Below, one piece after another: positions 8,030 through 54,675 of a stretch of DNA of 64,000 bases. The stretch's first letter is position 1. Every line of letters starts with the position of its first letter. The stretch covers positions 186,001-250,000 of IMG/VR virus record IMGVR_UViG_3300045125_000071. The stretch is one strand, 5' to 3'. The translations under genes and the position numbers were made by a program. The notes below the pieces were generated by a model that ran no database searches, was not told the DNA's origin, and saw nothing but the letters and a program-made list of their open reading frames with translations.

Positions 8030-9304
8030 GTTATTTGTTTTTTACAATTTACTCACTTCAAAAGAACAATGTGGTTCTTCAATATTGTTGTTCATGGTAT
8101 TAAGTTTTATTATAAATGTATTTACCCACCCATTCGGTTCTCCCATCCTGGTTGGTAAATGTTTTTGGTTTGTCAGCATTTTTATTCTTAATCCTACTAC
8201 CACTCCCCTTTACTCCCTTTTCTGCCCCGATATGATTATACTTGGGTTCCTCCTCAATTCAAACCCAATAGGTAGTTTGGATTGGATGGATTGAATATAT
8301 TCCGCAAGTATTTTTCTATTAATATTATTATTATATACTTTTTCAGAACCATCCATTGTTGGATATTTATATCTGTATTCAGATTTATTAAGGTCGAAGG
8401 AATTATAATAGTTTAAAAAACCAAGAAGATGTTCCTCCGTGAACATACACTTTTCACGGGCTTTATTATGGCCAGCTACAAAACCAATAACCATATCAGG
8501 ACGTGAGTTTTCAGCCATCATTCTATCAGGGTTTCTTTTCCAATAAAAATCTCTAGCCAATTGGTCAACATCGTCTTCATCCTCAAGATATTTTTGGAAT
8601 TTTAACAACTTCATCGTAATGTTTAAAATTATCCAAATTAAAATCTTTCATTGTTTGTAGACATATTTCATATTCCATCCCAGTTTCGTAGTAATTATCT
8701 ACAAACCACCTAATCCTCTCTTCATAGGATAATTCCCTCATCTTTTTAATTGGGGGTAACACTGATATACCATCCAAATATTTCGCACCATTAAGTGGTA
8801 AATGTGCAAGTATTTGGTATTGATTTTTCTCATCCCAATCGTTTGGATTATCTACTTGCCAAACATGATACTCGCCAGTAGTTAGTTTTTCTATGACCAA
8901 ATATGGAAATATATCAGACTTGTAGTTCTCACCTATGGTAAATAAGTAATCATCTATCTTTACTATTGGATGTGTCATAGTTCTATTTCTGATGTGAGGA
9001 ATGTTTGTTTATCTTCTTGGTATAACCCATTCATGTTATCATGTTCACAGTTATAATTTATGATTCCAATAGATTTACCTTCTTCAAAACACTTCTCAGC
9101 AAGAAGTGCTGATGGGATGAGTTGTTCTTTCACTTTCTTTAATGACGTTGCCATCTGGCTATCAATAGTTGTAACTGTTTTTCCCAAATTTGATTCTTTA
9201 ATTAATGCGTCAAGCACAGCATTACTGATAAGAGAATAATCTTCAAGTTTTATTTTCTGCTTCATAATCCGATAGTTTAATGATACAATATTAACAATAA
9301 ACTG

Positions 9305-13749: not shown

Positions 13750-14530
13750 TTTCTTTCATTTTTGTTTTGATTTCTTCCAACGTTGCAAGGTAAGTAAATT
13801 GACCGTCCTTGTAGAGTGTTTTCAATTCGCTATTAACTTCATAACCCCATGAAACTCTGTCAACTAAAGGTAATCACCGTCATAGTTTTTGGTAACTTGT
13901 AACAAACCAGTCGCAGATTTCTTTGTTCCATCATCGGTAACAGGATTCTTGAAAATCTCACGACTTTCACCATTCACCTCGACATAGGTTGCTTTCATTG
14001 CAAAACCAAAAGTGTCGCGGGTATTGTACTGATATGTGAATGAACCAACACCAAATACAATGTTCGTGGATGCGAACCCTTTGGATGCAAAGTCGTTTGC
14101 AGATTTCCTCTGCCCTCTCAAGCGTAATAGAATCCCCATAAATGACTCCAATGTGCGGGTCCAATACTTTGTATCCTTGGTCATTTACGGTGCCACCAAA
14201 GACATCCCAAAGCAGTTCTACAACACCTTTGAAAGATGGGTGATTGGCATCGTAATCGTGGTACTCAAGAATCTCTGCGGTGTTGTATCCACAAACGATG
14301 TCAGCTGGGTTTCCGCTATCAGGACGAATAACCAATTTACCATCACGGGCGACAATTTTGTCTTTCAGAATCGGAAGATATTCAGTACACATCCTCCAAA
14401 TATCAAAAGTGTCGCTAACCATTGAGAAAATACCTGTTGGGAATTTGTCCAATAGTTCATTAATCCCATTCAATTCGTTGGTGACTTTCTTTTTGACGAC
14501 TCTCTTTCTTGTTTCGATAACGGTTTTCAT
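13739..14530 (-). CDS. nadV: Nampt/Namat-like enzyme, C-terminal half (separate gene; frameshifted)
   Basis: Own ATG at 14530 (MKTVIETRKRVVKKKVTNELNG). Then PTGIFSMVSDTFD, LVIRPDSG, VIYGDSIT, NIVFGVGS, TRDTFGFAMKAT, KKSATGLL. Confidence 0.85.
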
Positions 14531-14581
14531 GATTTTTTTGTTTTTAATGTCATTTGTGTAGGTAACAATATATTTATTGTT

Positions 14582-15319
14582 ATGAATCACAAACAAATAT
14601 ACCAAAATATTATTGACAAAGCAAAATCCCAAAACAGAAATAAAAAAGAATCATATTTTGAGAAACATCACATTATACCAAAAAGTGTTGGTGGTAACAA
14701 CTCAAAAGATAATTTAGTATTATTGACTGCTAAAGAACATTTTGTTTGTCATCGTCTATTATGTTTTATATATCCCGAATCCAAATCTCTTTATTTCGCA
14801 TTTTGGGCAATGTGTAATCAAGTAAAAGGTGATGTTAAACGTGATTACAGAATTAGTTCCAGGATTTATGAAAACGCAAAATTAAAATTTAAAGAAGTTA
14901 ATTCTTTGTTACATAAGGGTAAAAAACTTTCCGATGAACATATATCTAAAATCAGAGAAAGAATGTTATCTGACAAGAATCCAATGAAAAATCGGAAAGG
15001 TGAAAATAATCCTCTATATAAAAAAGAACGTAACTCAAACATTAAATCTAAAATTTCAAAAACCAAACTCTTAAACCCCACAAAAAATTGTAATTTCAAG
15101 GGGATTTACATTACTCCTTTAGGTGAATTTTTCACATCTACCCAAGCATCCGAAAAACATAATTTAGATAGGTCGGTAATAATTGAAAGATGTAAAGAAA
15201 AATCTAATAAAGTCATAACTAAAAAAAGTGTTTGTTTTTCAAAAGATTTAACATCTAACGACATTGGAAAAACATATAAAGAAATTGGTTGGTATTTTAT
15301 ACCTCAGTTTCCGAAATGA
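14582..15319 (+). mobile_element. Free-standing HNH homing endonuclease, T4 MobE-like, with NUMOD3-like tail; antisense to and inside nadV
   Basis: MNHKQIYQNIIDKAK...EKHHIIPKSVGGNNSKDNLVLLTAKEHFVCHRLL, then HKGKKLSDEHISKI and KGENNPLY. Confidence 0.88.
14594..14625 (-). promoter_or_regulatory. Consensus Bacteroidota promoter antisense within HNH gene, facing the Nampt C-half
   Basis: Minus strand TTTG-N20-TATATTTG, about 64 nt upstream of ATG 14530. Confidence 0.55.
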
Positions 15320-16121
15320 TATTTCCATTATCATCATAAACTACTTGAACTTTATACTCCTCTTCGATTTCAATTTCACTAAATTCAGTTATAGAGCACA
15401 TCACCGAATGTTCGGTTGCATTTACACTACCAACAATCGTCCCTTGTGCCCCATAGAATTTCCTTGCACCATGAATGACTGGGAGACTATCGGAGCCTGA
15501 GAATGAGATTGCGTGTCCAAGACCCGAACTAACACAAGCTTCGACAGAATCAAGTCCCCGCATGGAGAAGTCATGTGCTTGCCAATCGACAAACCATGAT
15601 TTTTCCTTGTCGGTTTTTTCTTGCCAACTTGTCAAAACCTTGCGATATTGGGCTGCGATGGTTGCGGAAGTCATTGGTTTCCAAAGCAGATTGGAAATGA
15701 TTGTTTCCAAGTAGTTGGTAATCCAATAAAAGTCTGGGTGCGTGTTGTAAATTGTCAACACAGGAACCTTGATGCCAACAATTTCACCTTCGGGAATGAT
15801 TTTGACATGAATGGGTAAATAACCCAAATCATGGAGTTTCTCGAAGTGTGAAACATCGTAATCTGTATTTAAGTACAAACTCAATTCTCTTTTCATTTCA
15901 CCACAAACCTCTTCCTTAGGTCTTGAGAAAAACTCTTTTTGGAATGCCTCATGAATTTGCATCATGACCATTTGTTGCCCGAATGAAACGACTTTATCGC
16001 AACCTTTCGGGGCGTGTTTATTGCTTCGGGGTGTGAAATTGGAGTACACCAGGGTTGTTCCTTGAGGGTACATCAAGTGGTGGCCTGTCTTATAGCCATC
16101 AGTTAAAAGCAACGGATTCAT
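15297..16121 (-). CDS. nadV: Nampt/Namat-like enzyme, N-terminal half
   Basis: LLLTDGYKTGH, VYSNFTPRS, HDFSMRG, ATEHSVMC, then a non-homologous acidic tail and a stop. Confidence 0.9.
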   Translation of the reverse strand: MNPLLLTDGYKTGHHLMYPQGTTLVYSNFTPRSNKHAPKGCDKVVSFGQQMVMMQIHEAFQKEFFSRPKEEVCGEMKRELSLYLNTDYDVSHFEKLHDLGYLPIHVKIIPEGEIVGIKVPVLTIYNTHPDFYWITNYLETIISNLLWKPMTSATIAAQYRKVLTSWQEKTDKEKSWFVDWQAHDFSMRGLDSVEACVSSGLGHAISFSGSDSLPVIHGARKFYGAQGTIVGSVNATEHSVMCSITEFSEIEIEEEYKVQVVYDDNGNIISETEV

Positions 16122-32374: not shown

Positions 32375-34086
32375 TTAAAAAAAGACATCTTCCACATAAG
32401 TCTCTGATTTTACGCGAGTTGTCTCGATTACGTTTAGTGAATTTTTTATAGCCAAAATTCGAGTTATATTAGTCAAATCTGTGATTGCGGTTAAAAAATG
32501 GTCTGGTGGATTTTGATTACAAAAATATCTTGATTGTAAAAGTTTCCCCGTTTTTACATCATGTTCACAAGTAACCCTGTCTTTACTTTTTGTATCTCTT
32601 ATAGATACTATTATTGAAGTTTCTTTATCAAAATATCCAGCAACACAATGATGCATATGGGAACCTTCATCAATGTATTCCAATTCAGTTGTCAACAATT
32701 TAAAATTAAATCTATACTCTGTATTTGTTTCCTGGTCAAAATAAGTTTTATTACTATCAATTGCTTTTATAGTATCATCATAAAATCTTTTAATACCATA
32801 ATATTGTTTTTTAATTTGTAATAGTAATCGTGCAAAAGATAAATGTTCATTATGAAACTCATCATAATTGTTAAATCTAAACCTCACATTAATATTGTAT
32901 TCAATTAATTTATTTAATTGGTCTATATGGTCAACTAATAAATTTAATTTATTAATAGTTAATGTAAGAGAATCACAAATAAATTCTGGTTCTCGTAAAA
33001 GTTTAATTACTTTCCTTTTATCGTGTTCAGAAAGATTATATTTCTCAATTCTTCTAAAAATGTGAGAAATACCAACTAATTCACCATTTGCCGAATTTTG
33101 AAAATCTTCGAGTCTAAATTTAGGTATTTCAATATTATTCAAATAATGACCGCTATTATCACCCATAATTTTAACTATATAGGTCAAAAAATGATATTCA
33201 AATCTGGCTTTTCATTGAATATTTTGATTGTTTTTTTTGATTTAATTCCGAATTTATCAAGAATCGCAACCAGAAGTTTTCTATCACTCTTTTTAAGATG
33301 TTTTTCAGTTGGATAAAAATGTCGAATCAACCAGCTTGGTGTATTGTTAGCTATTTTAATTTTTTTAAACTTAATGAAAGTATCTATTATGTTATCGTAA
33401 AATGATTTGTTAGATTTTTCATCAATACCTAATTCATCTAAAAAAATATACATGAAATTTTGAATATCATTGAAATCATCAAAAGCATCTCTTAATTTTT
33501 GATTTGCTAAAATATCAAGACCAAATTTTGTTAACAAACTACTCTGATATATCACACGATGTAATAAATTGAAATTGTTCACTCTAAAGGTTTTGGATTC
33601 ACCTTTATTATGTTTATTTAAAATGCTGATATGTATATTACCTGTTTTTGTATTGATAGTGATTGAATTTATGTTGGTTGTATATTTAAAAACATATCGT
33701 TGTAATCCCTGGATTTAGTATGATGAAAAATTTTAATGGTCAATTTATCACCATTCCTGATAATTTTTCTCTCAATATAATGTGTTATAATTGAAACAAA
33801 AGGTTTTCCATAATATTTTTTTATTTTATCATCTTCATTTGTCCATATCGTTTTATTTACACGTTCAAAATACCCATGATGATATACCCCATTCTGGTTA
33901 TTATGAAAAAATTTTGTTGTTCTATTTTTATATTTTGGTGGAATGTTTAAATTAACAAAAAGAATTACCTATTGAACCAAAAATATCTGATTCATTTTCG
34001 TAAAGGTGTTTTTTACTTATTTGGCAATAGTTTTTCACCATAGTAATAGATGCATAATTAATTTTCTTACAATACAAAATTTCCAT
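32375..34086 (-). CDS. PcfJ-domain protein (frameshifted; ORFs 32375, 33184 and upstream fragments)
   Basis: EGSHMHHCVAGY...IVSIRD...RVTCE...QSRYFCNQNP. Confidence 0.7.
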
Positions 34087-34476: not shown

Positions 34477-35145
34477 TCATGGTTTGAAGTTATCTAAACT
34501 TAGAGATGTGTTCACATTTTTATAGAATAGATATAAAAGATAAAAAATTATGATAATAGCACTTGTAATGACACCAGCGGTTGCTCCACGCATTATATTA
34601 TCACCGATATTAATTCCACTTTTTTCAATTTCTTCTTTGTTCTTTATTTTCTTTTCCATTCTTTTTTGTTCTATTAGTTGATATTCTTCATCCTGTTCAA
34701 AAATTTCAGGATTATTAACAACGGTTTTTAAAAGAGCCTTATTAGTTAGTTCGTTGAAAAAATATTCATTATTATGACAAGAGACTATGGCATTATAAAT
34801 CAATTCACTATCATCACTTTTTGTTAAATAAGAATTAGCACCAAGACTCATCATTCTACTAACCATACTTGTTTGATTATGCATGGATAATATGATGACT
34901 TTGATATTTCGATACTCTTCATTAGATTTCAATATTGGTAGTACCGCCATACCATCCATATTTGGCATGTTGATATCCAGCAATATCACATCTGGTTTTA
35001 TGTTTCTCAATTTATACAATAAATCGGAACCATCAACGGCCTCACCAACAATTTGAATATCATCCTTGGTTGATAATGCCATTTTAACACCTTGTCTAAA
35101 TAGGGTGTGGTCATCACAAATGAAGACTTTAATCGGACGATTCAT
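34477..35145 (-). CDS. NarL-type response-regulator receiver domain with C-terminal TM helix, no HTH
   Basis: ICDDHTLFRQG, VILLDINMPNMDG, ILSMH, GANSYLTK; C-terminal GVITSAIIIIFYLLYLFY. Confidence 0.85.
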   Translation of the reverse strand: MNRPIKVFICDDHTLFRQGVKMALSTKDDIQIVGEAVDGSDLLYKLRNIKPDVILLDINMPNMDGMAVLPILKSNEEYRNIKVIILSMHNQTSMVSRMMSLGANSYLTKSDDSELIYNAIVSCHNNEYFFNELTNKALLKTVVNNPEIFEQDEEYQLIEQKRMEKKIKNKEEIEKSGINIGDNIMRGATAGVITSAIIIIFYLLYLFYKNVNTSLSLDNFKP

Positions 35146-35189: not shown

Positions 35190-35816
35190 TTAATAAAATT
35201 TTATTTTAGGGAATAGGATATTTTCCATAAAATAAGTTGCGGAGACCTCGCCAATCTTCTTTTTCAATACATTATATGTCCTGGGATTTTTTGATTGGAT
35301 TTCACAGTAATTATTCTGAATCTCAATGATTTTCCTATAATCACCAGTCTCTTTTATATTCAAAATTTCATTAATATACCAACTATACTTTGATATTGCC
35401 CAATTGCAAAATCGTTTTAGCTCATCCATTGATGATGGTTTAATCAATATGAACCTATCGCTAAAAACAGTTGCCCATTCTGGTAATGGTTTCCTTTCAT
35501 CCCAACTAACACCCTCATCAAAGGGGTAGCTTTTGAGACCAGGACTTAAATCCATGTAAGCACCAATTGGGTTGTTATCACTTATAATGACATCAAATCC
35601 AAAAATAGGTTCTGACTCAATGGTGTGGAAATGTTGTTATATGAAGAACATCGACTTTGGAATCTGTGTATCTTTCAACATGTGCCATCCTAAAGATGTC
35701 AGATTTGAAACGATAATTACTCCACCCATAATCTTCAGTTGTTAATTCAACAACATTATTTGTTGCATTGATTACGTCTAAAAACTGTAAGAAACATCAT
35801 CTAGAAAATTATACAT
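35190..35816 (-). CDS. Ferredoxin-dependent bilin reductase (PcyA/PcyX-like; frameshifted)
   Basis: YGWSNYRFKSDIFRMAHVE, VLHITTFP, PIFGFDVI, MDLSP, LPEWATVFS, QNNYCEIQSKNPRT, FMENILFP. Confidence 0.8.
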
Positions 35817-36351
35817 TGATTGTTTTTTTGTGCAATTTTTCGAATATATCAATTATAAAATCATAACCTTTATTAACCTCATCGGCCCATTCATCTTTCT
35901 GTCGCTCTCTTATGATTTTTATAACTTCTTGACTATTTTCAAAATCGTACATTTTACCTGACCCTGGAATTTTAGACTTCATCATTTGTCCACCAAACAA
36001 CAAAGCTAAATAATTTAAATAAACATGGGGCCAAATTGTTTCTTCATCCAATGTAGATAGATAATTACAATAACTATCAGCAATTTTTGTTTCTTGGTCT
36101 ATGATATTATTTTGGTTATTACCATTATAGTACGCAAGATTCATTTCTACAATATCCTGATATATTTTACCTGACCTTAGAAATTCATTCGGTAAAAGAA
36201 TGATACTTTCTATTTTTTCGAATATCTTATGTTGTGATTTTAAATATTCTAAGTATTGTAATTGAGTTAATTTGCCATCAAACATGATGAGATTGAATGG
36301 CATCCTTTCAGCTAACTTATGTTTTATTGCGGTAGCTTCTCTTAAATTCAT
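35809..36351 (-). CDS. Heme oxygenase
   Basis: LREATAIKHKLAE (proximal His), HVYLNYLALLFGGQMM, WADEVNKGYDF. Confidence 0.8.
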   Translation of the reverse strand: MNLREATAIKHKLAERMPFNLIMFDGKLTQLQYLEYLKSQHKIFEKIESIILLPNEFLRSGKIYQDIVEMNLAYYNGNNQNNIIDQETKIADSYCNYLSTLDEETIWPHVYLNYLALLFGGQMMKSKIPGSGKMYDFENSQEVIKIIRERQKDEWADEVNKGYDFIIDIFEKLHKKTINV

Positions 36352-36599
36352 TAAAAGAATTTACTTCCCTCATTTTATATTGGTTAACAATCTGTTTCGG
36401 TATATAACTTCTACCAAACATATCTAATTTTTCAATTGGTTTTCCAGTTTTAATTATTTCCTGAGCTTTAACTTTATTTGTCACAAAACCAACAATTTCA
36501 TACTGAGCATTAAAACCGATTAACTTTCCATTATCTGTCAATAACTCCTCTATTAAATATATTTTCTTCATAAAATCCGATTATTATAATAATAAGAAA

Positions 36600-36933: not shown

Positions 36934-37899
36934 ATTAATAAATATGGTCAACTAAGTCAAATATTATTTCCAAAATATTTTGGTCATTAACTTTTTTACC
37001 GCTTTCATCTGTTACAGTATAATCAACCATATTTTCACCAGTACCATGTTGCTCAAACTCATCATAAGTGTATTTTTTACCATCTATGCTTATTTCATAA
37101 ACACGATATGTTGTTTTTGATTCATAATGATTAATAATTTTTGCGTTCATATTATTATTATTTAATCCCACCAGGAGCGAATATCAGAACCATCAAAATT
37201 TTTATAATTATACTCAGTTTTTTTGTACCTCTGATAATATCCCATAATTCTTCCCATTCCATTTCTTTTAATCTCTCTGCTCTGAGATATATTCTACGAT
37301 TATAATCAACATCGTCTGGATTGTTATCGTTAGTAAAAATATTAATTTCTTTGAGTTCACCCATTTCTTTCTCCGCTTTTTCGATATAATGGAACTCATC
37401 AATATTATTTAATATTTCTACTGCCCTCCGCATTTTTTTTAACTTCAGGTTTTTTGTCTCAGGTATTTCCATACCTCTTTTATCGGTTTCTTTCTCCATT
37501 AAAACCAAACAACGAGAAAACATTTGTAATGTATATGAATAATCCCACCATTGGAAATTCATTAATTCTTTTCTGAAAAGCCAAATATTTCTAAAGAAAT
37601 TTGGTATATCGTATCTAAAATAATGATACAATTTATACCACCAGGTTTCGTGCATTTTCAATTTTTCTAATGACTTAAAAAATGTGTCTGCAAAAGTGAT
37701 TCGCATAATTAATCGTTTTCGAGTTCGAGTTGTGATTCATTAAATATGTGTAACATACCATTATCCCTCATTTCAGCAACAACCCTGGTTTCACCAGATG
37801 TTGTTTTAAAGATTGCAACAACAATACCTGGGAATTTATAACCTTTTGGTTTATAAACCTTGTCTCCTACCTTGAATTTGTAATTATTTTCCATATTTT

Positions 37900-39353
37900 T
37901 TAATTTGTGTAAACATATACGCAATCAATTGCCCTTGACATTGCAACATACTTTAATTGTTGTTCAACTTGTTTATCGCTGAACCTTTTAATCGTATCTT
38001 CAAGAACAAAAACTCTACTGTAAGTTCCGCCTTGTGATTTATGAATGGTATGTGCATAACCATAACCCAATGTTTGCTTTATTTTATTTTTTCCAGAAAC
38101 ATCTTTGATGTTTTTCATAAATGCTAATTGTGATTCAATCATTCTAGCTTCTTTAAAACAAATCATCGCCTTATAATAATCTTTATCTTTCATAAATTGG
38201 CCACCCATTCTATTTTTATCCGCAATAGCTTCAACAAATAATTGTATTTTATCATTACTTTCATTATTATCAACAACAAAAATATTTTTGAAACTATCCT
38301 CATCATTCATAAGGTTTTTAAGAATAAGATAAAAACCAGAAAATTCAACATACTCATTTTCTATTTTTACATTTTTAGTACCCTTATTAACTTCATGGAC
38401 CAGATAATCACCACTATTGATTATCAAGGGTTCTTTTGTATCATAATCAATATCAAAATTATTATAACCCATCAATATATCGTTGACAACAATTTGTTCA
38501 TCTGTTTGAAATAATACATTTCTCACATAATCGTTTAAACTGTTTACACCAGAATTAGTACCAGATAAAATCCTGAAAAAACAATTTATTTTCATTGAAT
38601 TCTTTAGATTTAAAATTCTCATTTATGATTTTTCTAGCACTATCCGAATCATTCACATAATGAACACTACCATTATCTCTAATATCTGTTATGTAAGAAA
38701 AATCACCACCTAACCTTAAAATTGTAGATTCTTTTAAAATTGGATTATCGCCAGTTCTTTCAACTTTGGTCAATTGTATTTTTTTACCTTTTCTAAAAAC
38801 TGGTGAAACATCAGAATCTTTTACAGGTTTAAGTTGTGCGGGGTCACCTACATATATGATTTTAATTTTATACTTCGTTTTTCCAAGTTTCCAAAAATCC
38901 ATATAAAGATTCTGACACCATGGAAGATTCATCAACTATTATAATATCTCCACGTTTAATTTTTTGGTTTATTTTTTTGCGAATTCTAAATCCTTAATAT
39001 CGTAATCACCATTTTCAAATTTTAATATCTGGTGCTAACCCAAATAAAGAATGTAGTGTTATTACTTGAGCACCAGGATTTTTCATTTTAGTTACGGCAT
39101 TTGCCCTATGCGTTGGACTTGTATAATATTTTTTTACTTTACGGTGTTGTAGGTATTGGTCAAACAACGCAATAATTGTTGTTTTTCCTGTGCCAGCATA
39201 ACCCAAAAGTGTTATTTGGTTATCAAATTTTTCAGGATTTTCAATAAATTCTTCTAATTTTAATAACGCGTTTTTTTGTTCATCATTTAAACCAAATGAT
39301 AAATTTATGCTAAAACCATTTTTAAATTTGAATACATTCTTATTTTTTGCCAT
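37900..39353 (-). CDS. dda: Dda/RecD-like SF1B helicase (frameshifted)
   Basis: GYAGTGKTT, SPTHRA, IVDESSM, VGDPAQLKPV, LTKVERT, YAHTIHKSQGGTY, YVAMSRA. Confidence 0.85.
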
Positions 39354-43550: not shown

Positions 43551-44381
43551 CTATATCGCAATTTCTAAAGGTGAAACAATTTTTAGAATATTTTCGGTTC
43601 CTAAAATATCAAAATCATTTATTGTGTAATCATAGAAATTTTTGTTCTCTTTCAACATTAATTTTGGTTGTACATTCATTGGTGTTCTATTTAATACCTC
43701 ATTAAGTGCATCAAAATGTCTGTCATATATGTGAAGATTTTGAACCAAATGACAAAATTTACCAACCCTATACCCACAATGTCCAGCAACCATCATTTGC
43801 AATGCGACATATTGAATCTTGTTTATATACCCCGCGACCAAGTAATCGTTGCTACGTTGAATCAATGTCATATCTAATATTAAACCATCATTATCTTTTC
43901 TGACCGAAAACATAACCTCGTATGCACAAGGAAACAAACCTTTTGTTTCAGACAAATCATGGTATTGAAACATGTTTATGATATGTCTTCTACCGAATGG
44001 GTCATCAACTAAACCTTTTAACTTTTCATCAATTAAGTTATATCTACATATTGTTGCACCGTACCTTTGTCCGATTGTGTCATCACCAATATTCCATTCA
44101 TCCCACCAATTAATACCCATTTCTCTTGCAACTTTAAGTGAGGATGTTTGTTTTTGGTATATCCAAAATATTTCTTTGATTCCAGTTTTGATTGCAGTAT
44201 TTCTTAGTGTAGGAATTGGATATTCACCTTTTGATATATCATATTCTTCGAATACTCCAGTGATAAACTTAGAGTGTGCTCGAATACCGTCAGGATATTT
44301 TGCTCTTGGATTTTCATCGAAACAGCCTTCGTTGATAATTCTGTTGAGATTATCAATATAATACTTGTCTGCTTTATTCAC
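43551..44381 (-). CDS. thyA: Thymidylate synthase
   Basis: IGQRYG, RRHI, LFPCAY, QRSNDY, NKIQY, NLHIYDRH. Confidence 0.95.
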   Translation of the reverse strand: MNKADKYYIDNLNRIINEGCFDENPRAKYPDGIRAHSKFITGVFEEYDISKGEYPIPTLRNTAIKTGIKEIFWIYQKQTSSLKVAREMGINWWDEWNIGDDTIGQRYGATICRYNLIDEKLKGLVDDPFGRRHIINMFQYHDLSETKGLFPCAYEVMFSVRKDNDGLILDMTLIQRSNDYLVAGYINKIQYVALQMMVAGHCGYRVGKFCHLVQNLHIYDRHFDALNEVLNRTPMNVQPKLMLKENKNFYDYTINDFDILGTENILKIVSPLEIAI

Positions 44382-49433: not shown

Positions 49434-50815
49434 AATATTAATTTACCAGTTTATCGAGATTAATATCTCTTTCTTTTAAGATTTCCCAAAATCTTTCATA
49501 CACAGCATCCAACAAATCTTCTTTGGTTTCATATTTGTCAATAGACCATTCAAACCCTTTCTTTGTGTTGTGACTAAATTCCCACAATGATAATGCCATA
49601 TCGGTTGATTTTGACCATTCTCATATGTGCCTCAATGTCATCTGGTTCGTTTAGGTCGAACTCGAATATTCCTTTTGCCATAAATGATGGTTTTTTAAAA
49701 TGTAATCAAAAAATTTAATTCCCAAAATTTTTCCATATTTAATTTCCAAAATATTTTTTGGTGTTGGTGTATAATATGGATTATCAAAATCAGGTATATC
49801 AGGATAATATTTTTCCATACCTGTTTCGTAATTATTGAAGAACCAATAATCATAACGCTCAACATATTTTGCCTCCCTTTCGGTTATTTTGGTTTTCCAT
49901 TTTTTGGAAACTCATTATCCGTTTTAACTTTTTGAATGAAATCCTCTTTGGATAATGGTATAACAGTTTTATTTAAAAAATTATTATACGCCTTGTCCAA
50001 TATGTCGTCAAAATTATTTTTCACGATTACTCAGTATAATATTATTCCTTTGAAATCATAACCATCATTTTTATCCGCTTTTTCATGTTTACCATAATAC
50101 CATTCAGTATTGACATTTTCATTGAAAACCGATTCTTTAACATCCTCAACATCATCAAAACCACCCTCATAGCCACTGATTAACACTCTCATGTCTTCGG
50201 GATATGTTTTCAGAATTTCTATAAGCTCTTTGGTTGTCATATAAATGATTTATTCAAATATATTTAAAATTATTTTTCTTCTTTTAAAAATATTTAAACA
50301 ATTATACACAACATGTGACTCTTGAAATGTGTATAATCCATTATGTTTGTGCGTGTTGTAATGCTAACTCTATTAATTTAATAGCCATTTTTTTATCTTT
50401 TTGATTCGAATAACTTATTTTAATTCTTCGTGTGATTCAAATTCCTAATAATCCGTTGTATAGTATTTCCATAATGCAGTATTTTATTTCTATAATGTCA
50501 AGTTTACATGATTTATGGGATAGAAATTCCCAGCTCGAATATAATGCACCATACCAGAGGATATTGACAAGAGGTATGATGGGTCGAGAAAACCTGGATG
50601 GTTGCACGGTTTTTAAATGTTAATAAGGGGGCACCATTCCTCTGGACTGAAGAGACTGCAAAATACCTCTCGATATTGTTTTTACACGTTACAATAGGGT
50701 TAGTAGAATACACCCAAATTGTCCACGCAGCAGAGCCACATAGCATGAATCCGCCGAAATATTCTGGAAATTGGTGACCATGCTGTTGAATTCCCTGCTG
50801 GCATGGCTTCCAAAT

Positions 50816-51487
50816 TTAAAGTTGGTGACCAAGTTCGTATGTACCTTGGTTCACCACAGAATCCAGTTCGTTAATTAGTTTATTGTATTCAACTTCTTTA
50901 TACAAGAAGAATTGTCCGCACGTAAAACTACCTCTAAAATCAACTGGTAATTCTAAATAATGTATATTTTCATAAACTTTATGCCTGTTTTCTCTTTTTT
51001 CTCTACCCAGGAATGAACGGGTTGTTGCTGTGAAAAGATTAATAGCAAACATTTTATTATTATAACCAATAAGCATATCTATACCATCATTCACGTCTAA
51101 TTTTCTATTGTATATAACATCGCCAGCAAGATTTTCTTTTACATAACAAGTAAAATGAACATCCCTAACTAATGATGGTATGTTCTAAAAATCCTCGCTT
51201 TTAAAGCTAACATAATTTTATCATCAAAATTTTTTTATCAAAAATTTCTTGTTATCTTTTAAATAACATTCCCAAAATTCTTCTTGAGTTGGTATTGTCT
51301 TATTTTTATAAAGATATCTGTAAAAACTTGTTAAAAATGTCGGAAATTTCATTCTCCATTCAACATTATCATCTTTTATTGAGGAAAATGTTAATTTGTA
51401 ATTCAAGATTTGTTCTTCAATAGATTTGCTGGTTAATTCGACATAATCAAAAAAATTTTCAAAATCATCTTTATTGAGTATTCCCAT
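50816..51487 (-). CDS. TaqI-family-like endonuclease (frameshifted)
   Basis: IPTQEEFWECY...LKARIFRTYPSLVRDVHF...YNRKLDVNDGIDMLI; family recognised from memory only. Confidence 0.45.
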
Positions 51488-51837: not shown

Positions 51838-52074
51838 ATGGAAAGAGATTTAACTAAATTGACGAGTGTTAAGATTATTAAAAAAATTATCTTGAATTCA
51901 AGAAAAACAACAATAAATACGGATTTAACATTACAGAAATTTGTTAATAGAACTATTGATTTGTATATGAGAGATTCTGATTTTAGAGAGAAAGTGAACT
52001 CTCATGAAACAAATGGAATAAAGAATTCAAAAGTATTAATAAATGAAGAAAAAGAAAATACTGTTATTGTCTGA
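51838..52074 (+). CDS. Small conserved protein, possibly ribbon-helix-helix
   Basis: KLTSVKI...TLQKFVNRTIDLY. Confidence 0.45.
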   Translation: MERDLTKLTSVKIIKKIILNSRKTTINTDLTLQKFVNRTIDLYMRDSDFREKVNSHETNGIKNSKVLINEEKENTVIV

Positions 52075-53420
52075 TGATTTAAGGTCAATGAGTGGTGTGG
52101 CAACAATGTCCAAAGAAATTGTTGTTGGTACATGTTTAAAATATGATTGGATTCAAGTGGGTTCAATGATTAATCATCCTGATTATGGTAAATTAATAGA
52201 TGTTAGTGAAGATTTAAGAAAACTTTATAATAAAGACGATATTAATGTTAAAATTCTAGCATATAACAATTATGGTGATATTCTCTTAATAAGAGAACTT
52301 ATCAAACATGAAAAACCAGATGCCATAATGCATTTTACAGACCCGCACTATTGGCAATGGTTATATGATGCTGAACATGAAATAAGACAACATGTTCCAA
52401 TTCTATTTTATCATGTTTGGGACAATGTGCCAGACCCAATATACAATAGAGATTATTATGAAAGTTGCGATTGGATTGGTTGTATATCAAAACAAACATT
52501 TGGTATTGTGCATCGAGTTGGAAAATTAGACATTTCAGATACATTTATACCATTAACAGATGACCAAATAAAATATGTTCCTCATGGAATCAATTCAAAT
52601 GTTTTTAAACCTGCACAAGTTAGTGATGACATCAAAATATAATTTATGATAAAGATTATGAATTCGTTTTATTTTTCAACAATAGAAACATAAGAAGAAA
52701 AAACCATCGGATGTAATATATGCATATAAAGTTTTTTGCGACCAATTTACCAAAGGAAAATCTGATAGGTGTTTATTATTAATGCATACAACACCTATAG
52801 ATGAAAATGGTACGGATTTGATTACGGTAAAGAGAAGCTTTATGTCCAGATTACAATGTGAAAATACTTAACAGTAAAACTTCAACAAGAACAATTAAAT
52901 GAATTATATAATGTTGTTGATTGTACTAATTAACATCTCAAATAATGAAGGCTTCGGTTTAACAACATGCTAGAAAGTATAATGGCTGGAACACCGATTA
53001 TCGTTAATGTAACAGGCGGATTACAAGACCAATGTGGTTTTAACATGTAAATAGGTAAAGAGTTTGATGAATATGATTATATAAAATATGGTTCATTGCA
53101 TGAAAAGAAAAATGGGACTTTATATCACACGGTGAATGGGTGTATACCTGTTTGGTCAGTATCCCATAGCTATAAATGGTTCACCATTAACACCATACAT
53201 TTTTGATGATTCAATTGAACCTGGATGATGTTTCAGATGCTATAATGAAAATGTATAATTATGGTAAATCCAAAAGAAAAGAAATTTGGGCATGAAAGGT
53301 AGAGAATGGGCGATTAGAATCTCTCAAGTGATGCAGCATGTGTAAAAAAATGATTGAAGGTATTGAAGAGGTTATAAATAATTTCAAGAATAAAGAAAAA
53401 TATCAATTTATAAAATTATA
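52043..53420 (+). CDS. GT-B (GT4-like) glycosyltransferase (heavily frameshifted)
   Basis: ILLLSDDLR.MSGVA, FTDPHYW, YVPHGIN, NNRNIRRK, NEGFGL, TGGLQDQCG. Confidence 0.8.
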
Positions 53421-54675
53421 TGAGTAAACCGTTTTTATTATTTAGAGCACCAGTTGAAACAATATCTGGTTATGGGGCGCATTCAAGAGATATTTTAAAA
53501 TCATTATACAATACTAAATTATTTGATATTAAAATTGACAGTTGTTTGTGGGGAAATACTCCAATGACGGCATTAGATACTGAAAATGATTTGTTTCATT
53601 TGTGGATAAAAAATAATATGATTACGCATCTTGATAGACAACCAGATTATTATGTTCAAGTTACAGTACCTAATGAATTTCAAACATTAGGAAAATATAA
53701 TATTGGGATAACTGCTGGTGTGGAAACCACTATGATACCTAAAGATTGGATAACAGGTTGCAATAAAATGAATTTAATCATTGTACCATCCGCATTTTCA
53801 AAGAGTGTTATGTTAACAACACAATATAACGATATGTTACTAACAAAAATATGTACAAAAATAGATGTTATATTTGAAGGGGTTGATACTGGATTGTACA
53901 AAAAATTAAATTTTAATGAATTAAAAGATACCAAAATAAAAAATTATTTAGATGGTATTGATGCCGACTTTTGCTTCATTTTTGTTGGTCATTGGTTGAA
54001 AGGAGAACTCGGTCAAGATAGAAAAGATGTTGGAATGTTGATAAGAAAATTCGCTGAAGGTTTTAATGGTGTGGATAATAAACCAGCGTTGGTATTAAAA
54101 ACTTCTTCTGCGAATTTCTCGGTGAAAGAAAGGGAAAGATTAAAAAGAAGTATAAAAAACATATTATACGGTATTGAAAAACCCCCGTCTGTATACTTGG
54201 TTTTTGGTACGTTGGCGGATGATGAAATGAATGATATGTATAACCATCCAAAAATAAAGGCAATGGTTTCCTTCACAAAAGGTGAGGGTTTTGGTAGGCC
54301 ATTATTAGAATTCACTATGACGGGTAAACCTGTATTAACATCTAATTGGTCTGGCCATTTGGACTTTTAGACCCCGATTTATCAGTATTAATTAATGGTG
54401 AATTGAAAGATGTTCATCCCTCTGCCGTTGACCAATTTATTATTCAGGGTTCAAAATGGTTCCAGGTTGATTACGATGACGCGATATCTAAAATGAGAGA
54501 TGTTATAGCTAATTATGATTTATATTTAGAAAAATCGGAACTAATGAAAGTTAATAATATGAAAAACTTCTCATTGGGGGCAATGAACACAAAATTCAAT
54601 GATGTAATGAGTAAATGTCTTGGTGAACAAAGATTAAATGAAATTTCATTACCGAAATTAAATAAATTATCATGA
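53420..54675 (+). CDS. GT-B (GT4-like) glycosyltransferase
   Basis: SGYGAHSRD, GITAGVET, VGHWL, TKGEGFGRPLLE, NWSGHLDF. Confidence 0.85.

What the first reader, a model, noticed from the sequence alone, without database searches (positions are those of the whole stretch)
35190..36351. Heme oxygenase plus bilin reductase in a phage with Bacteroidota promoters
Seen: overlapping heme oxygenase and FDBR genes. The FDBR retains His (VLH) and Asp (GFD) at positions matching the PcyA catalytic pair. Known: ho1 with pebS/pcyA occurs in cyanophages, and hemO with pcyX occurs in uncultured non-cyanophages. Inference: phycobilin synthesis in a host group not known for phycobilisomes, implying a non-photosynthetic role (iron release, redox, signalling or anti-defence).
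Basis: partly seen in the sequence, partly recalled or inferred. Interest (0 to 1): 0.7.

Follow-up and report, generated by a model that had tools for sequence, protein, structure and literature searches.

The report
Phage heme-to-bilin gene pair
A large freshwater phage that probably infects Bacteroidota carries the known two-gene cassette that turns host heme into a bilin pigment; the second gene belongs to an undescribed PcyA-like branch and is broken in this assembly, most likely by sequencing errors.

Summary
The two genes are real and lie at the stated coordinates. The heme oxygenase (35809-36351, minus strand) is intact. The bilin reductase (FDBR) starts 8 nt before the oxygenase stop. 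It is not one open frame: the window lacks three single bases that 209-aa homologues have, so it reads in three pieces. Other genes in the window are frame-split the same way (about one event per kb), and all three pieces show strong purifying selection. I therefore read the breaks as assembly errors; no reads covered them.

The record is a 251-kb T4-like phage from freshwater. A Bacteroidota host is supported by a -33/-7 promoter motif with the right spacing, by the absence of Shine-Dalgarno signals, and by capsid and receiver-domain relatives.

The reductase belongs to a virus-only clade outside PcyX and cyanophage PcyA. It keeps the PcyA Glu/His/Asp triad, so I predict phycocyanobilin.

Heme oxygenase plus PcyX or PcyA cassettes in non-cyanophages, including large freshwater phages, are already published. 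This is a new member of a known kind, with a probable new host phylum. A membrane-anchored receiver-domain gene sits next to it in the closest relatives. The physiological role is untested.

The parts
35809..36351 (-). Heme oxygenase gene, intact, 180 aa. Proximal His11; distal-helix GGQ.
35778..35816 (-). FDBR piece A: start codon (8-nt overlap with the HO stop), 12 codons, then a premature TAG. Homologues have a T6 run where the window has T5 at 35780-35784.
35617..35780 (-). FDBR piece B, in a shifted frame. It holds the Glu (HVE) and His (VLH) that match PcyA Glu76 and His88, and ends at a TGA at 35617-35619. Single G at 35618 and single C at 35614 where homologues have GG and CC.
35190..35612 (-). 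FDBR piece C, back in the frame of piece A. It holds the Asp (FGFD) that matches PcyA Asp105 and the C-terminal helices. Pfam PF05996.
34477..35145 (-). Orphan response-regulator receiver domain with a C-terminal transmembrane helix. It lies immediately downstream of the FDBR here and in six close relatives.
32375..34086 (-). PcfJ-like gene. It is one ORF of 566-612 aa in relatives and is split over four frame segments here. It shows the frameshift load of this assembly.
37158..37706 (-). Virus-only hypothetical protein (p182), conserved 0.4-1.3 kb upstream of HO in many relatives. Its C-terminus is frameshifted here. No globin or bilin-binding similarity found.

Best explanation
This is a viral auxiliary metabolic cassette for heme breakdown, carried by a large T4-like freshwater phage (at least 251 kb) whose host is most likely a member of the Bacteroidota.

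Step 1: the heme oxygenase opens host heme to biliverdin IX-alpha and releases Fe2+ and CO. This is inferred from family membership and conserved ligand residues.

Step 2: the translationally coupled ferredoxin-dependent bilin reductase reduces biliverdin using host ferredoxin; no ferredoxin gene was found in the phage. The enzyme keeps the full PcyA triad (Glu, His and Asp at the Glu76/His88/Asp105 positions). It lies outside the PcyX clade, which has Asp, Ser or Asn at the first position. I therefore predict a four-electron reduction to phycocyanobilin, as was shown for the PcyA of freshwater phage CB_2. This product call is an inference.

The three missing bases that break the reductase frame in this record are most likely assembly errors, so the gene is probably intact in the real phage.

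Why a phage of a non-phototroph makes a bilin is not shown. My ranking is: first, heme catabolism and iron release, with the reductase removing the biliverdin product; second, supply of a chromophore or signal to a host bilin sensor.
For: Identity of the two enzymes:
- Pfam matches above cut-off.
- The HO profile hits solved HOs at 1.4e-21 with His and GG conserved.
- The FDBR's best solved relatives are PcyX at 3e-19 and PcyA at 4e-15, with no PebS hit.
- An AlphaFold model of the 89%-identical intact homologue has pLDDT 91.7 and TM 0.82-0.85 to PcyA.

Triad and clade:
- E48, H59 and D76 are invariant in 22 homologues.
- In a tree of 128 FDBRs the window's clade is separate from the PcyX clade. 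That clade is anchored by the pelagiphage Mosig and by P0173, which scores 280 bits to 5OWG.
- Glu76 is PcyA-specific and needed for 18-vinyl reduction; PcyX has Asp there.
- The CB_2 phage enzyme without that Asp makes PCB.

The cassette is a conserved unit:
- HO lies directly upstream of the FDBR in 17 of 18 IMG/VR loci (the 18th starts inside the FDBR), in phages with different capsids.
- Natural HO-FDBR fusions exist in both orders.

The breaks are probably artefacts:
- Each is a one-base loss at a repeated base.
- dN/dS to relatives is 0.03-0.09 in all three pieces, including the out-of-frame one.
- Two glycosyltransferases, DUF192, the PcfJ-like gene, p182 and a Dda-like helicase are also frame-split against intact homologues, about 12 events in about 12 kb.

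Host:
- TTTG-N19-21-TAnnTTTG occurs 35 times against 7.6 in shuffles and 7-16 for permuted motifs. The spacing peaks at 19-20, and there is a co-oriented intergenic cluster at genome 156-181 kb.
- Relatives show a peak of 45 at spacer 20.
- Shine-Dalgarno motifs occur upstream of only 4% of starts, and the upstream region is A-rich.
- The nearest cultured capsids include Flavobacterium and Rhodothermus phages.
- Five of the six best bacterial hits of the receiver protein are Bacteroidota.
Against: - No read data covered the break sites, so a real recent pseudogene cannot be excluded.
- The 3.3-kb RNR ORF and the capsid and portal genes are intact, so the indel rate is uneven across the record.
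- The homopolymer spectrum is only weakly suggestive of long-read errors.
- The product is not assayed. The family has Pro at the PcyA Asp220 position, as PcyX does, and FDBR regiospecificity is known to be hard to predict.
- No Bacteroidota-type promoter lies near the cassette or in the closest relatives' short contigs.
- A Microcystis phage is as close in capsid sequence as the Flavobacterium phages.
- The HO-FDBR complex prediction gave no answer.
Confidence: 0.7

Rival explanations
1. The reductase is a genuine, recently inactivated pseudogene in this phage. Only the heme oxygenase works, so heme is converted to biliverdin, iron and CO.
For: The deposited sequence has two premature stops. 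HO and the receiver gene on either side are intact. No reads were available to contradict the sequence.
Against: All three pieces show dN/dS of 0.03-0.09 against relatives, including the out-of-frame piece. The three losses are single bases at repeated bases and add up to one codon. At least six other genes in the window, among them a replication-type helicase, are split the same way. All close relatives are intact.
Confidence: 0.12
2. The reductase works like PcyX or PebS and makes phycoerythrobilin, or stops at a two-electron product, rather than making phycocyanobilin.
For: Its best solved sequence match is PcyX. It has Pro at the PcyA Asp220 position, like PcyX. FDBR product specificity shifts with subtle changes.
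Against: Glu is invariant at the Glu76 position, and that residue is PcyA-specific and required for 18-vinyl reduction. The clade is outside the PcyX clade. The freshwater phage CB_2 enzyme that lacks the PcyX Asp makes PCB. The structural best matches are PcyA.
Confidence: 0.22
3. The host is not a Bacteroidota member. It could be, for example, a freshwater cyanobacterium or a proteobacterium, in which case the bilin could serve a classical pigment or phytochrome role.
For: Microcystis phage Mel-JY01 is among the nearest capsid relatives. The published freshwater phages with this cassette were assigned to methanotrophs. No promoter motif lies near the cassette. No CRISPR or prophage link was obtained.
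Against: The bipartite -33/-7 motif is enriched with a spacing peak, and it is clustered and co-oriented with genes. Shine-Dalgarno signals are absent. Sigma-70 consensus sites are not enriched. No psbA or phycobilisome gene was found. GC is 31%.
Confidence: 0.2

Closest known systems
hemO-pcyX cassette of uncultured marine phages and the pelagiphage Mosig (Ledermann 2016, cited; PcyX structure 5OWG)
   Same: A heme oxygenase lies directly upstream of, and overlaps, an FDBR of the PcyA/PcyX lineage, in a non-cyanophage T4-like genome. His and Asp are conserved, and Pro stands at the PcyA Asp220 position.
   Different: Identity to Mosig is only 34%. It scores 73 bits to 5OWG, against 250-280 bits for true PcyX clade members. 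It has Glu, not Asp, at the PcyX Asp55 position. It is shorter, at 209 aa. It comes from freshwater, and the predicted host phylum differs.
ho1 plus pcyX-like or vPcyA of large freshwater phages (Chen 2020; Wegner 2024, CB_2 enzyme shown to make PCB)
   Same: Large freshwater phages with non-cyanobacterial hosts. An FDBR without the PcyX Asp, predicted or shown to be a PcyA.
   Different: Those phages were assigned to proteobacterial methanotrophs and often carry AlaS. No AlaS was found here. The two hallmark motifs of this clade are absent from the FDBR sequence set of that paper, so the clade was not sampled there.
Cyanophage ho1 with pcyA or pebS
   Same: The same two-step pathway carried as a phage auxiliary gene set.
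   Different: Identity to cyanophage PcyA is 24-29% and the clades are separate. There is no PebS sequence match. No photosynthesis genes were found.
Alphaproteobacterial AX-clade PcyA (Bradyrhizobium ORS278 hemO-pcyA-alaS island beside bphP)
   Same: Glu/His/Asp triad and the local motif pattern AHVE ... PIFGFD. The setting is non-cyanobacterial, and the chromophore there feeds a phytochrome.
   Different: It is cellular, about 50 aa longer, and linked to alaS and a phytochrome gene. Neither was found here.
pre-PcyA clusters of heterotrophic bacteria, with HO and bilin-binding globins
   Same: FDBR plus HO in non-phototrophs.
   Different: pre-PcyA proteins lack the Glu76 and His88 equivalents, and this protein has both. 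No globin or phycobiliprotein-like neighbour was found.

Membership tests
Heme oxygenase (canonical HO-1 type, PF01126) | Sequence match above the curated cut-off | tested here: met
   41.7 bits against a cut-off of 23. The homologue profile hits solved HOs at 1.4e-21.
Heme oxygenase (canonical HO-1 type, PF01126) | Proximal His ligand in the first helix and Gly-Gly in the distal helix | tested here: met
   H11, G120 and G121 are invariant in 14 sequences. They align to the EAH and SGGQ motifs of human HO-2.
Heme oxygenase (canonical HO-1 type, PF01126) | Converts heme to biliverdin IX-alpha | not testable with these tools
   Needs an enzyme assay.
Ferredoxin-dependent bilin reductase, PcyA/PcyX lineage (PF05996) | Sequence match above the cut-off, and the FDBR alpha/beta/alpha fold | tested here: met
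   PF05996 at 52.1 bits against a cut-off of 31 for piece C. The model of the 89%-identical homologue has pLDDT 91.7 and TM 0.82-0.85 to PcyA.
Ferredoxin-dependent bilin reductase, PcyA/PcyX lineage (PF05996) | One uninterrupted reading frame | tested here: not met
   Two premature stops and three single-base losses relative to homologues in this record. Judged a probable assembly artefact, but not verified with reads.
PcyA (phycocyanobilin:ferredoxin oxidoreductase) | Catalytic triad Glu76, His88 and Asp105 | tested here: met
   E48, H59 and D76 of the family align to the triad and are invariant.
PcyA (phycocyanobilin:ferredoxin oxidoreductase) | Product is phycocyanobilin, via 18(1),18(2)-dihydrobiliverdin | not testable with these tools
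   Needs an anaerobic FDBR assay with HPLC.
PcyX (phage phycoerythrobilin synthase) | Asp (Asp55) at the position of PcyA Glu76 | tested here: not met
   Glu at that position. The PcyX clade shows D, S or N there.
PcyX (phage phycoerythrobilin synthase) | Placement inside the PcyX clade | tested here: not met
   The clade is separate in a 128-sequence tree. It scores 73 bits to 5OWG, against 250-280 bits for clade members.
pre-PcyA (Pre-1, Pre-2, Pre-3) | Lacks the equivalents of Glu76 and His88 | tested here: not met
   Both residues are present.
PebS / PebA | Sequence membership in the PebA/PebS/PUBS lineage | tested here: not met
   No PebS or PebA hit at E up to 1. The structural match is weaker, TM 0.62-0.71.
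Viral hemO-FDBR auxiliary cassette | HO directly upstream of the FDBR on a phage genome | tested here: met
   8-nt overlap here. The same order occurs in 17 of 18 viral loci (the 18th starts inside the FDBR) and in Mosig. Phage hallmark genes are on the same record.
Phage of Bacteroidota | Bacteroidota sigma-A promoter type (-33 TTTG, -7 TAnnTTTG, spacing about 19-21) and no Shine-Dalgarno use | tested here: met
   35 sites against 7.6 expected, a spacing peak at 19-20, and a co-oriented cluster. Shine-Dalgarno 4-mers occur at 4% of starts. This is indirect evidence; no direct host link was obtained.

The most novel reading that the evidence does not exclude
In the sub-lineage that holds this window, HO, FDBR and the membrane-anchored orphan receiver domain form one phage-borne bilin signalling module. 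The phage-made bilin would load a host phytochrome-type sensor kinase. PHY-domain kinases were found in 22 of 401 sampled Bacteroidota genomes. The phage receiver would then capture or drain that kinase's phosphoryl signal, making infection of a non-phototrophic host responsive to light or redox state. The evidence is only conserved adjacency in seven contigs, intact phospho-acceptor residues and the absence of any kinase gene in the phage.
Probability: 0.06. Interest if true: 0.85.

Novelty: new member of a known kind. Interest (0 to 1): 0.42.

Why it matters
Phage-encoded bilin synthesis has been explained mainly by light harvesting in cyanobacterial hosts. Each non-phototroph case weakens that explanation and points to a more general use of heme breakdown during infection, such as iron release, removal of heme or a bilin signal.

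This case adds three things:
- A probable new host phylum. The reductase family was not found in any of 401 sampled genomes of that phylum.
- A compact, abundant, virus-only reductase clade with a PcyA-type active site. It could serve as a small PCB synthase for optogenetic tools.
- A candidate signalling partner gene next to the cassette.

It also gives a practical warning. This IMG/VR record carries about one frameshift per kb in the compared region, so gene calls from it are unreliable.

Tried and rejected
- Read-level check of the break sites. One low-depth freshwater run (X1) holds the phage but does not cover the sites. A second search listed no run, and laying X1 on another frameshift-rich stretch also gave nothing.
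- ORF-length statistics as a sign of fragmentation. I rejected this because the relatives' regions have similarly short ORFs.
- Homopolymer spectrum. There is only a weak deficit of long runs, and it is confounded by GC.
- HO-FDBR complex prediction gave no answer.
- p182 as a bilin-binding globin. Its Cys is not conserved, it belongs to a virus-only hypothetical family, and it has no globin-like structural neighbour.
- Bilin acceptors, lyases and helpers in the 251 kb. No GAF, GAF_2, phycobilisome, 2Fe-2S ferredoxin, AlaS-type aminotransferase, psbA or histidine-kinase ATPase gene was found.
- T9SS sorting domain as a Bacteroidota marker: not significant.
- A conserved third gene downstream of the FDBR in more distant relatives: the neighbours vary.
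- Bacterial copies of this clade: none among 185,579 species genomes by its signature motifs.
- DNA similarity to GenBank phages: none.
- Sigma-70 promoters and intrinsic terminators near the cassette were uninformative.

Full report
WHAT IS THERE

On the minus strand, an intact 180-aa ORF (35809-36351) is a heme oxygenase (HO). It matches Pfam PF01126 at 1.5e-10, above the cut-off. As a single sequence it is divergent from solved HOs (E 1.3e-4). A profile of 14 homologues from related loci hits human, cyanobacterial and bacterial HOs at 1.4e-21 to 1e-15. The proximal His (H11) and the distal-helix Gly-Gly (G120, G121) are invariant.

The next gene starts with an ATG at 35816-35814, eight bases before the HO stop (ATGTATAA), and ends at 35190. 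It is a ferredoxin-dependent bilin reductase (FDBR). Its C-terminal part matches PF05996 at 9.3e-14.

THE REDUCTASE IS BROKEN IN THIS RECORD

Three-frame translation shows three pieces:
- Twelve codons followed by a TAG.
- A 52-codon stretch in another frame that carries the HVE and VLH motifs and ends in a TGA.
- The remaining 140 codons, back in the first frame, carrying FGFD.

Intact homologues of 209 aa exist at up to 89% identity. A DNA alignment with three of them shows the window has T5 where they have T6, a single G where they have GG, and a single C where they have CC. In 1.85 kb aligned to the closest contig, these are the only non-triplet indels inside coding sequence.

WHY I READ THE BREAKS AS ASSEMBLY ERRORS

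(a) All three pieces, including the out-of-frame one, show pN of about 0.05 against pS of about 0.65 to the nearest relative. dN/dS is 0.03-0.09 against four relatives.

(b) Other genes in the window are split over frames when compared with intact homologues on short-read contigs. These are two glycosyltransferases (52058-54660), a DUF192 gene (50537-50868) and the PcfJ-like gene (32384-34086, four segments), and the C-terminus of p182. A Dda-like helicase is in three ORFs, 37900-39353. This is roughly 12 events in 12 kb compared.

(c) The losses sit at repeated bases.

There are caveats:
- Some long genes elsewhere on the record are intact (RNR of 1090 aa, capsid, portal).
- ORF-length statistics do not discriminate, because relatives' regions have similar values.
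- The homopolymer spectrum is inconclusive.
- No public reads covered the sites.

I give a true pseudogene about 0.12.

WHAT KIND OF REDUCTASE

The best solved relatives of the intact homologue are PcyX (5OWG, 3e-19, 73 bits) and Synechocystis PcyA (4e-15). PebS and PebA do not match. The alignments place the family's Glu, His and Asp on PcyA Glu76, His88 and Asp105, and all three are invariant in 22 homologues. An AlphaFold model (pLDDT 91.7) matches PcyA best (TM 0.82-0.85), then PcyX, then PebB, PebA and PebS.

A profile search of 1.8 billion representatives found 349 relatives. In a tree of 128 of them plus phage references, the window groups with its 209-aa family in well-supported nested sets. 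That clade is separate from two others:
- The PcyX clade, which contains the pelagiphage Mosig and P0173. P0173 scores 280 bits to 5OWG. This clade has D, S or N at the Glu76 position.
- The cyanophage PcyA clade.

The literature states that Glu76 is PcyA-specific and needed for 18-vinyl reduction, that PcyX has Asp there, and that pre-PcyA proteins lack both Glu76 and His88. A freshwater phage enzyme (CB_2) lacking the PcyX Asp was shown to make phycocyanobilin. I therefore predict PCB. The family has Pro at the PcyA Asp220 position, as PcyX does, and FDBR specificity is notoriously plastic, so I keep about 0.2 on another product.

THE CASSETTE IS A MOBILE UNIT

Seventeen of 18 IMG/VR loci found with the family profile have HO directly upstream of the FDBR; the 18th starts inside the FDBR. 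Only one of five large relatives shares this phage's capsid type. Downstream neighbours vary. Metagenomic proteins fuse the two enzymes in both orders. No bacterial genome among 185,579 species carries the clade's signature motifs. None of the FDBR sequences in the supplement of the 2024 freshwater-phage paper carries them either.

THE PHAGE AND ITS HOST

The window is part of a 251,358-bp linear IMG/VR record, about 75% complete, from freshwater. It has a T4-like capsid, portal, terminase and baseplate, a class II RNR with an intein, a CCA-adding enzyme and five tRNA genes. It has no DNA similarity to GenBank phages.

Host evidence is indirect but consistent:
- The Bacteroidota bipartite promoter TTTG-N19-21-TAnnTTTG occurs 35 times, against 7.6 in shuffles and 7-16 for permuted motifs.
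- The spacing peaks sharply at 19-20.
- About 15 co-oriented sites, many of them intergenic, cluster at genome 156-181 kb.
- In relatives carrying the cassette, the peak at spacer 20 is 45 against about 4.
- Shine-Dalgarno motifs are absent and the region upstream of starts is A-rich.
- Sigma-70 consensus sites are not enriched.
- Capsid relatives include Flavobacterium and Rhodothermus phages, but also a Microcystis phage.
- The receiver protein's best bacterial hits are mostly Bacteroidota.

No motif lies near the cassette itself. I put Bacteroidota at about 0.75-0.8.

POSSIBLE PARTNERS AND ROLE

The 251 kb held contain no ferredoxin, AlaS, GAF, phycobilisome, psbA or histidine-kinase gene. 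PF05996 was not found in 401 sampled Bacteroidota genomes. PHY-domain kinases occur in 22 of them above the cut-off.

Directly downstream of the FDBR, here and in six close relatives, lies an orphan NarL-type receiver domain. It has intact DD, D57, S87 and K109 residues, a variable charged linker and a C-terminal membrane helix. This is the basis of the speculative signalling reading.

The enzymology (heme to biliverdin plus iron and CO, then to a reduced bilin using host ferredoxin) is inferred from family membership. The benefit to the phage is unknown. I rank iron release and heme removal, with the reductase clearing biliverdin, ahead of chromophore supply.

COMPARISON AND VERDICT

HO plus PcyX in marine non-cyanophages, ho1 plus pcyX-like genes in large freshwater phages, and a proven freshwater phage PcyA are all published. 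My searches found no paper linking the cassette to phages of Bacteroidota or Flavobacteria.

The finding is therefore a new member of a known kind. It has a probable new host phylum and an unsampled PcyA-like clade. The copy in this record is frame-broken, most likely by sequencing error.

Noticed in passing
window 32384-34086, 37158-37250, 37900-39353, 50537-50868, 52058-54660: Many genes are split across reading frames when compared with intact homologues on short-read contigs. They are a PcfJ-like gene, the p182 C-terminus, a Dda-like helicase in three ORFs, a DUF192 gene and two glycosyltransferases. This is about one frameshift per kb compared, so gene calls from this record are unreliable.
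   Followed up: yes
window 13967-16121: A nicotinamide phosphoribosyltransferase gene lies in two parts on the minus strand (15297-16121 and 13967-14632). An HNH endonuclease ORF on the plus strand (14582-15319) sits between them. This looks like a homing-endonuclease or intron-type insertion.
   Followed up: partly
window 34477-35145: An orphan receiver domain with a C-terminal transmembrane helix and a conserved tail motif. It is conserved next to HO-FDBR in six relatives (L003, L004, L005, L033, L034, L035). No kinase gene was found on the phage record.
   Followed up: partly
proteins P0141, P0147, P0171, P0179, P0181 (FDBR-HO); P0183, P0264 (HO-FDBR); P0136 (FDBR-methyltransferase): [quoted passage not shown] One reductase is fused to a methyltransferase domain.
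   Followed up: partly
window 37158-37706; L008-L018 about 8150-9170: A virus-only hypothetical protein of about 176-197 aa lies 0.4-1.3 kb upstream of HO in many otherwise different phages. Its function is unknown, and no globin or bilin-binding similarity was found.
   Followed up: partly
genome G000:C1:156000-181200 (mostly before the window start): A dense run of about 15 co-oriented sites of the form TTTGGT...TAnnTTTG on the plus strand, many of them intergenic. It is probably a block of host-polymerase (early) promoters.
   Followed up: partly
genome G000:C1:14384-17656 (outside the window): A class II ribonucleotide reductase ORF of 1090 aa with weak, below-cut-off Pfam matches to an intein splicing domain and a LAGLIDADG domain.
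   Followed up: no
L012:11226-11312: A second, 29-aa fragment similar to the FDBR C-terminus (76% identity) lies about 0.6 kb downstream of the intact FDBR in one relative. It may be a remnant of a duplication or recombination.
   Followed up: no
window 36317-36571: The small ORF upstream of HO is 84 aa here and 73-74 aa in relatives, and it overlaps HO by 35 nt. Its stop may have been shifted by another single-base error near 36350.
   Followed up: no
window 43551-44381: An intact thymidylate synthase gene (PF00303, 8.6e-58).
   Followed up: no
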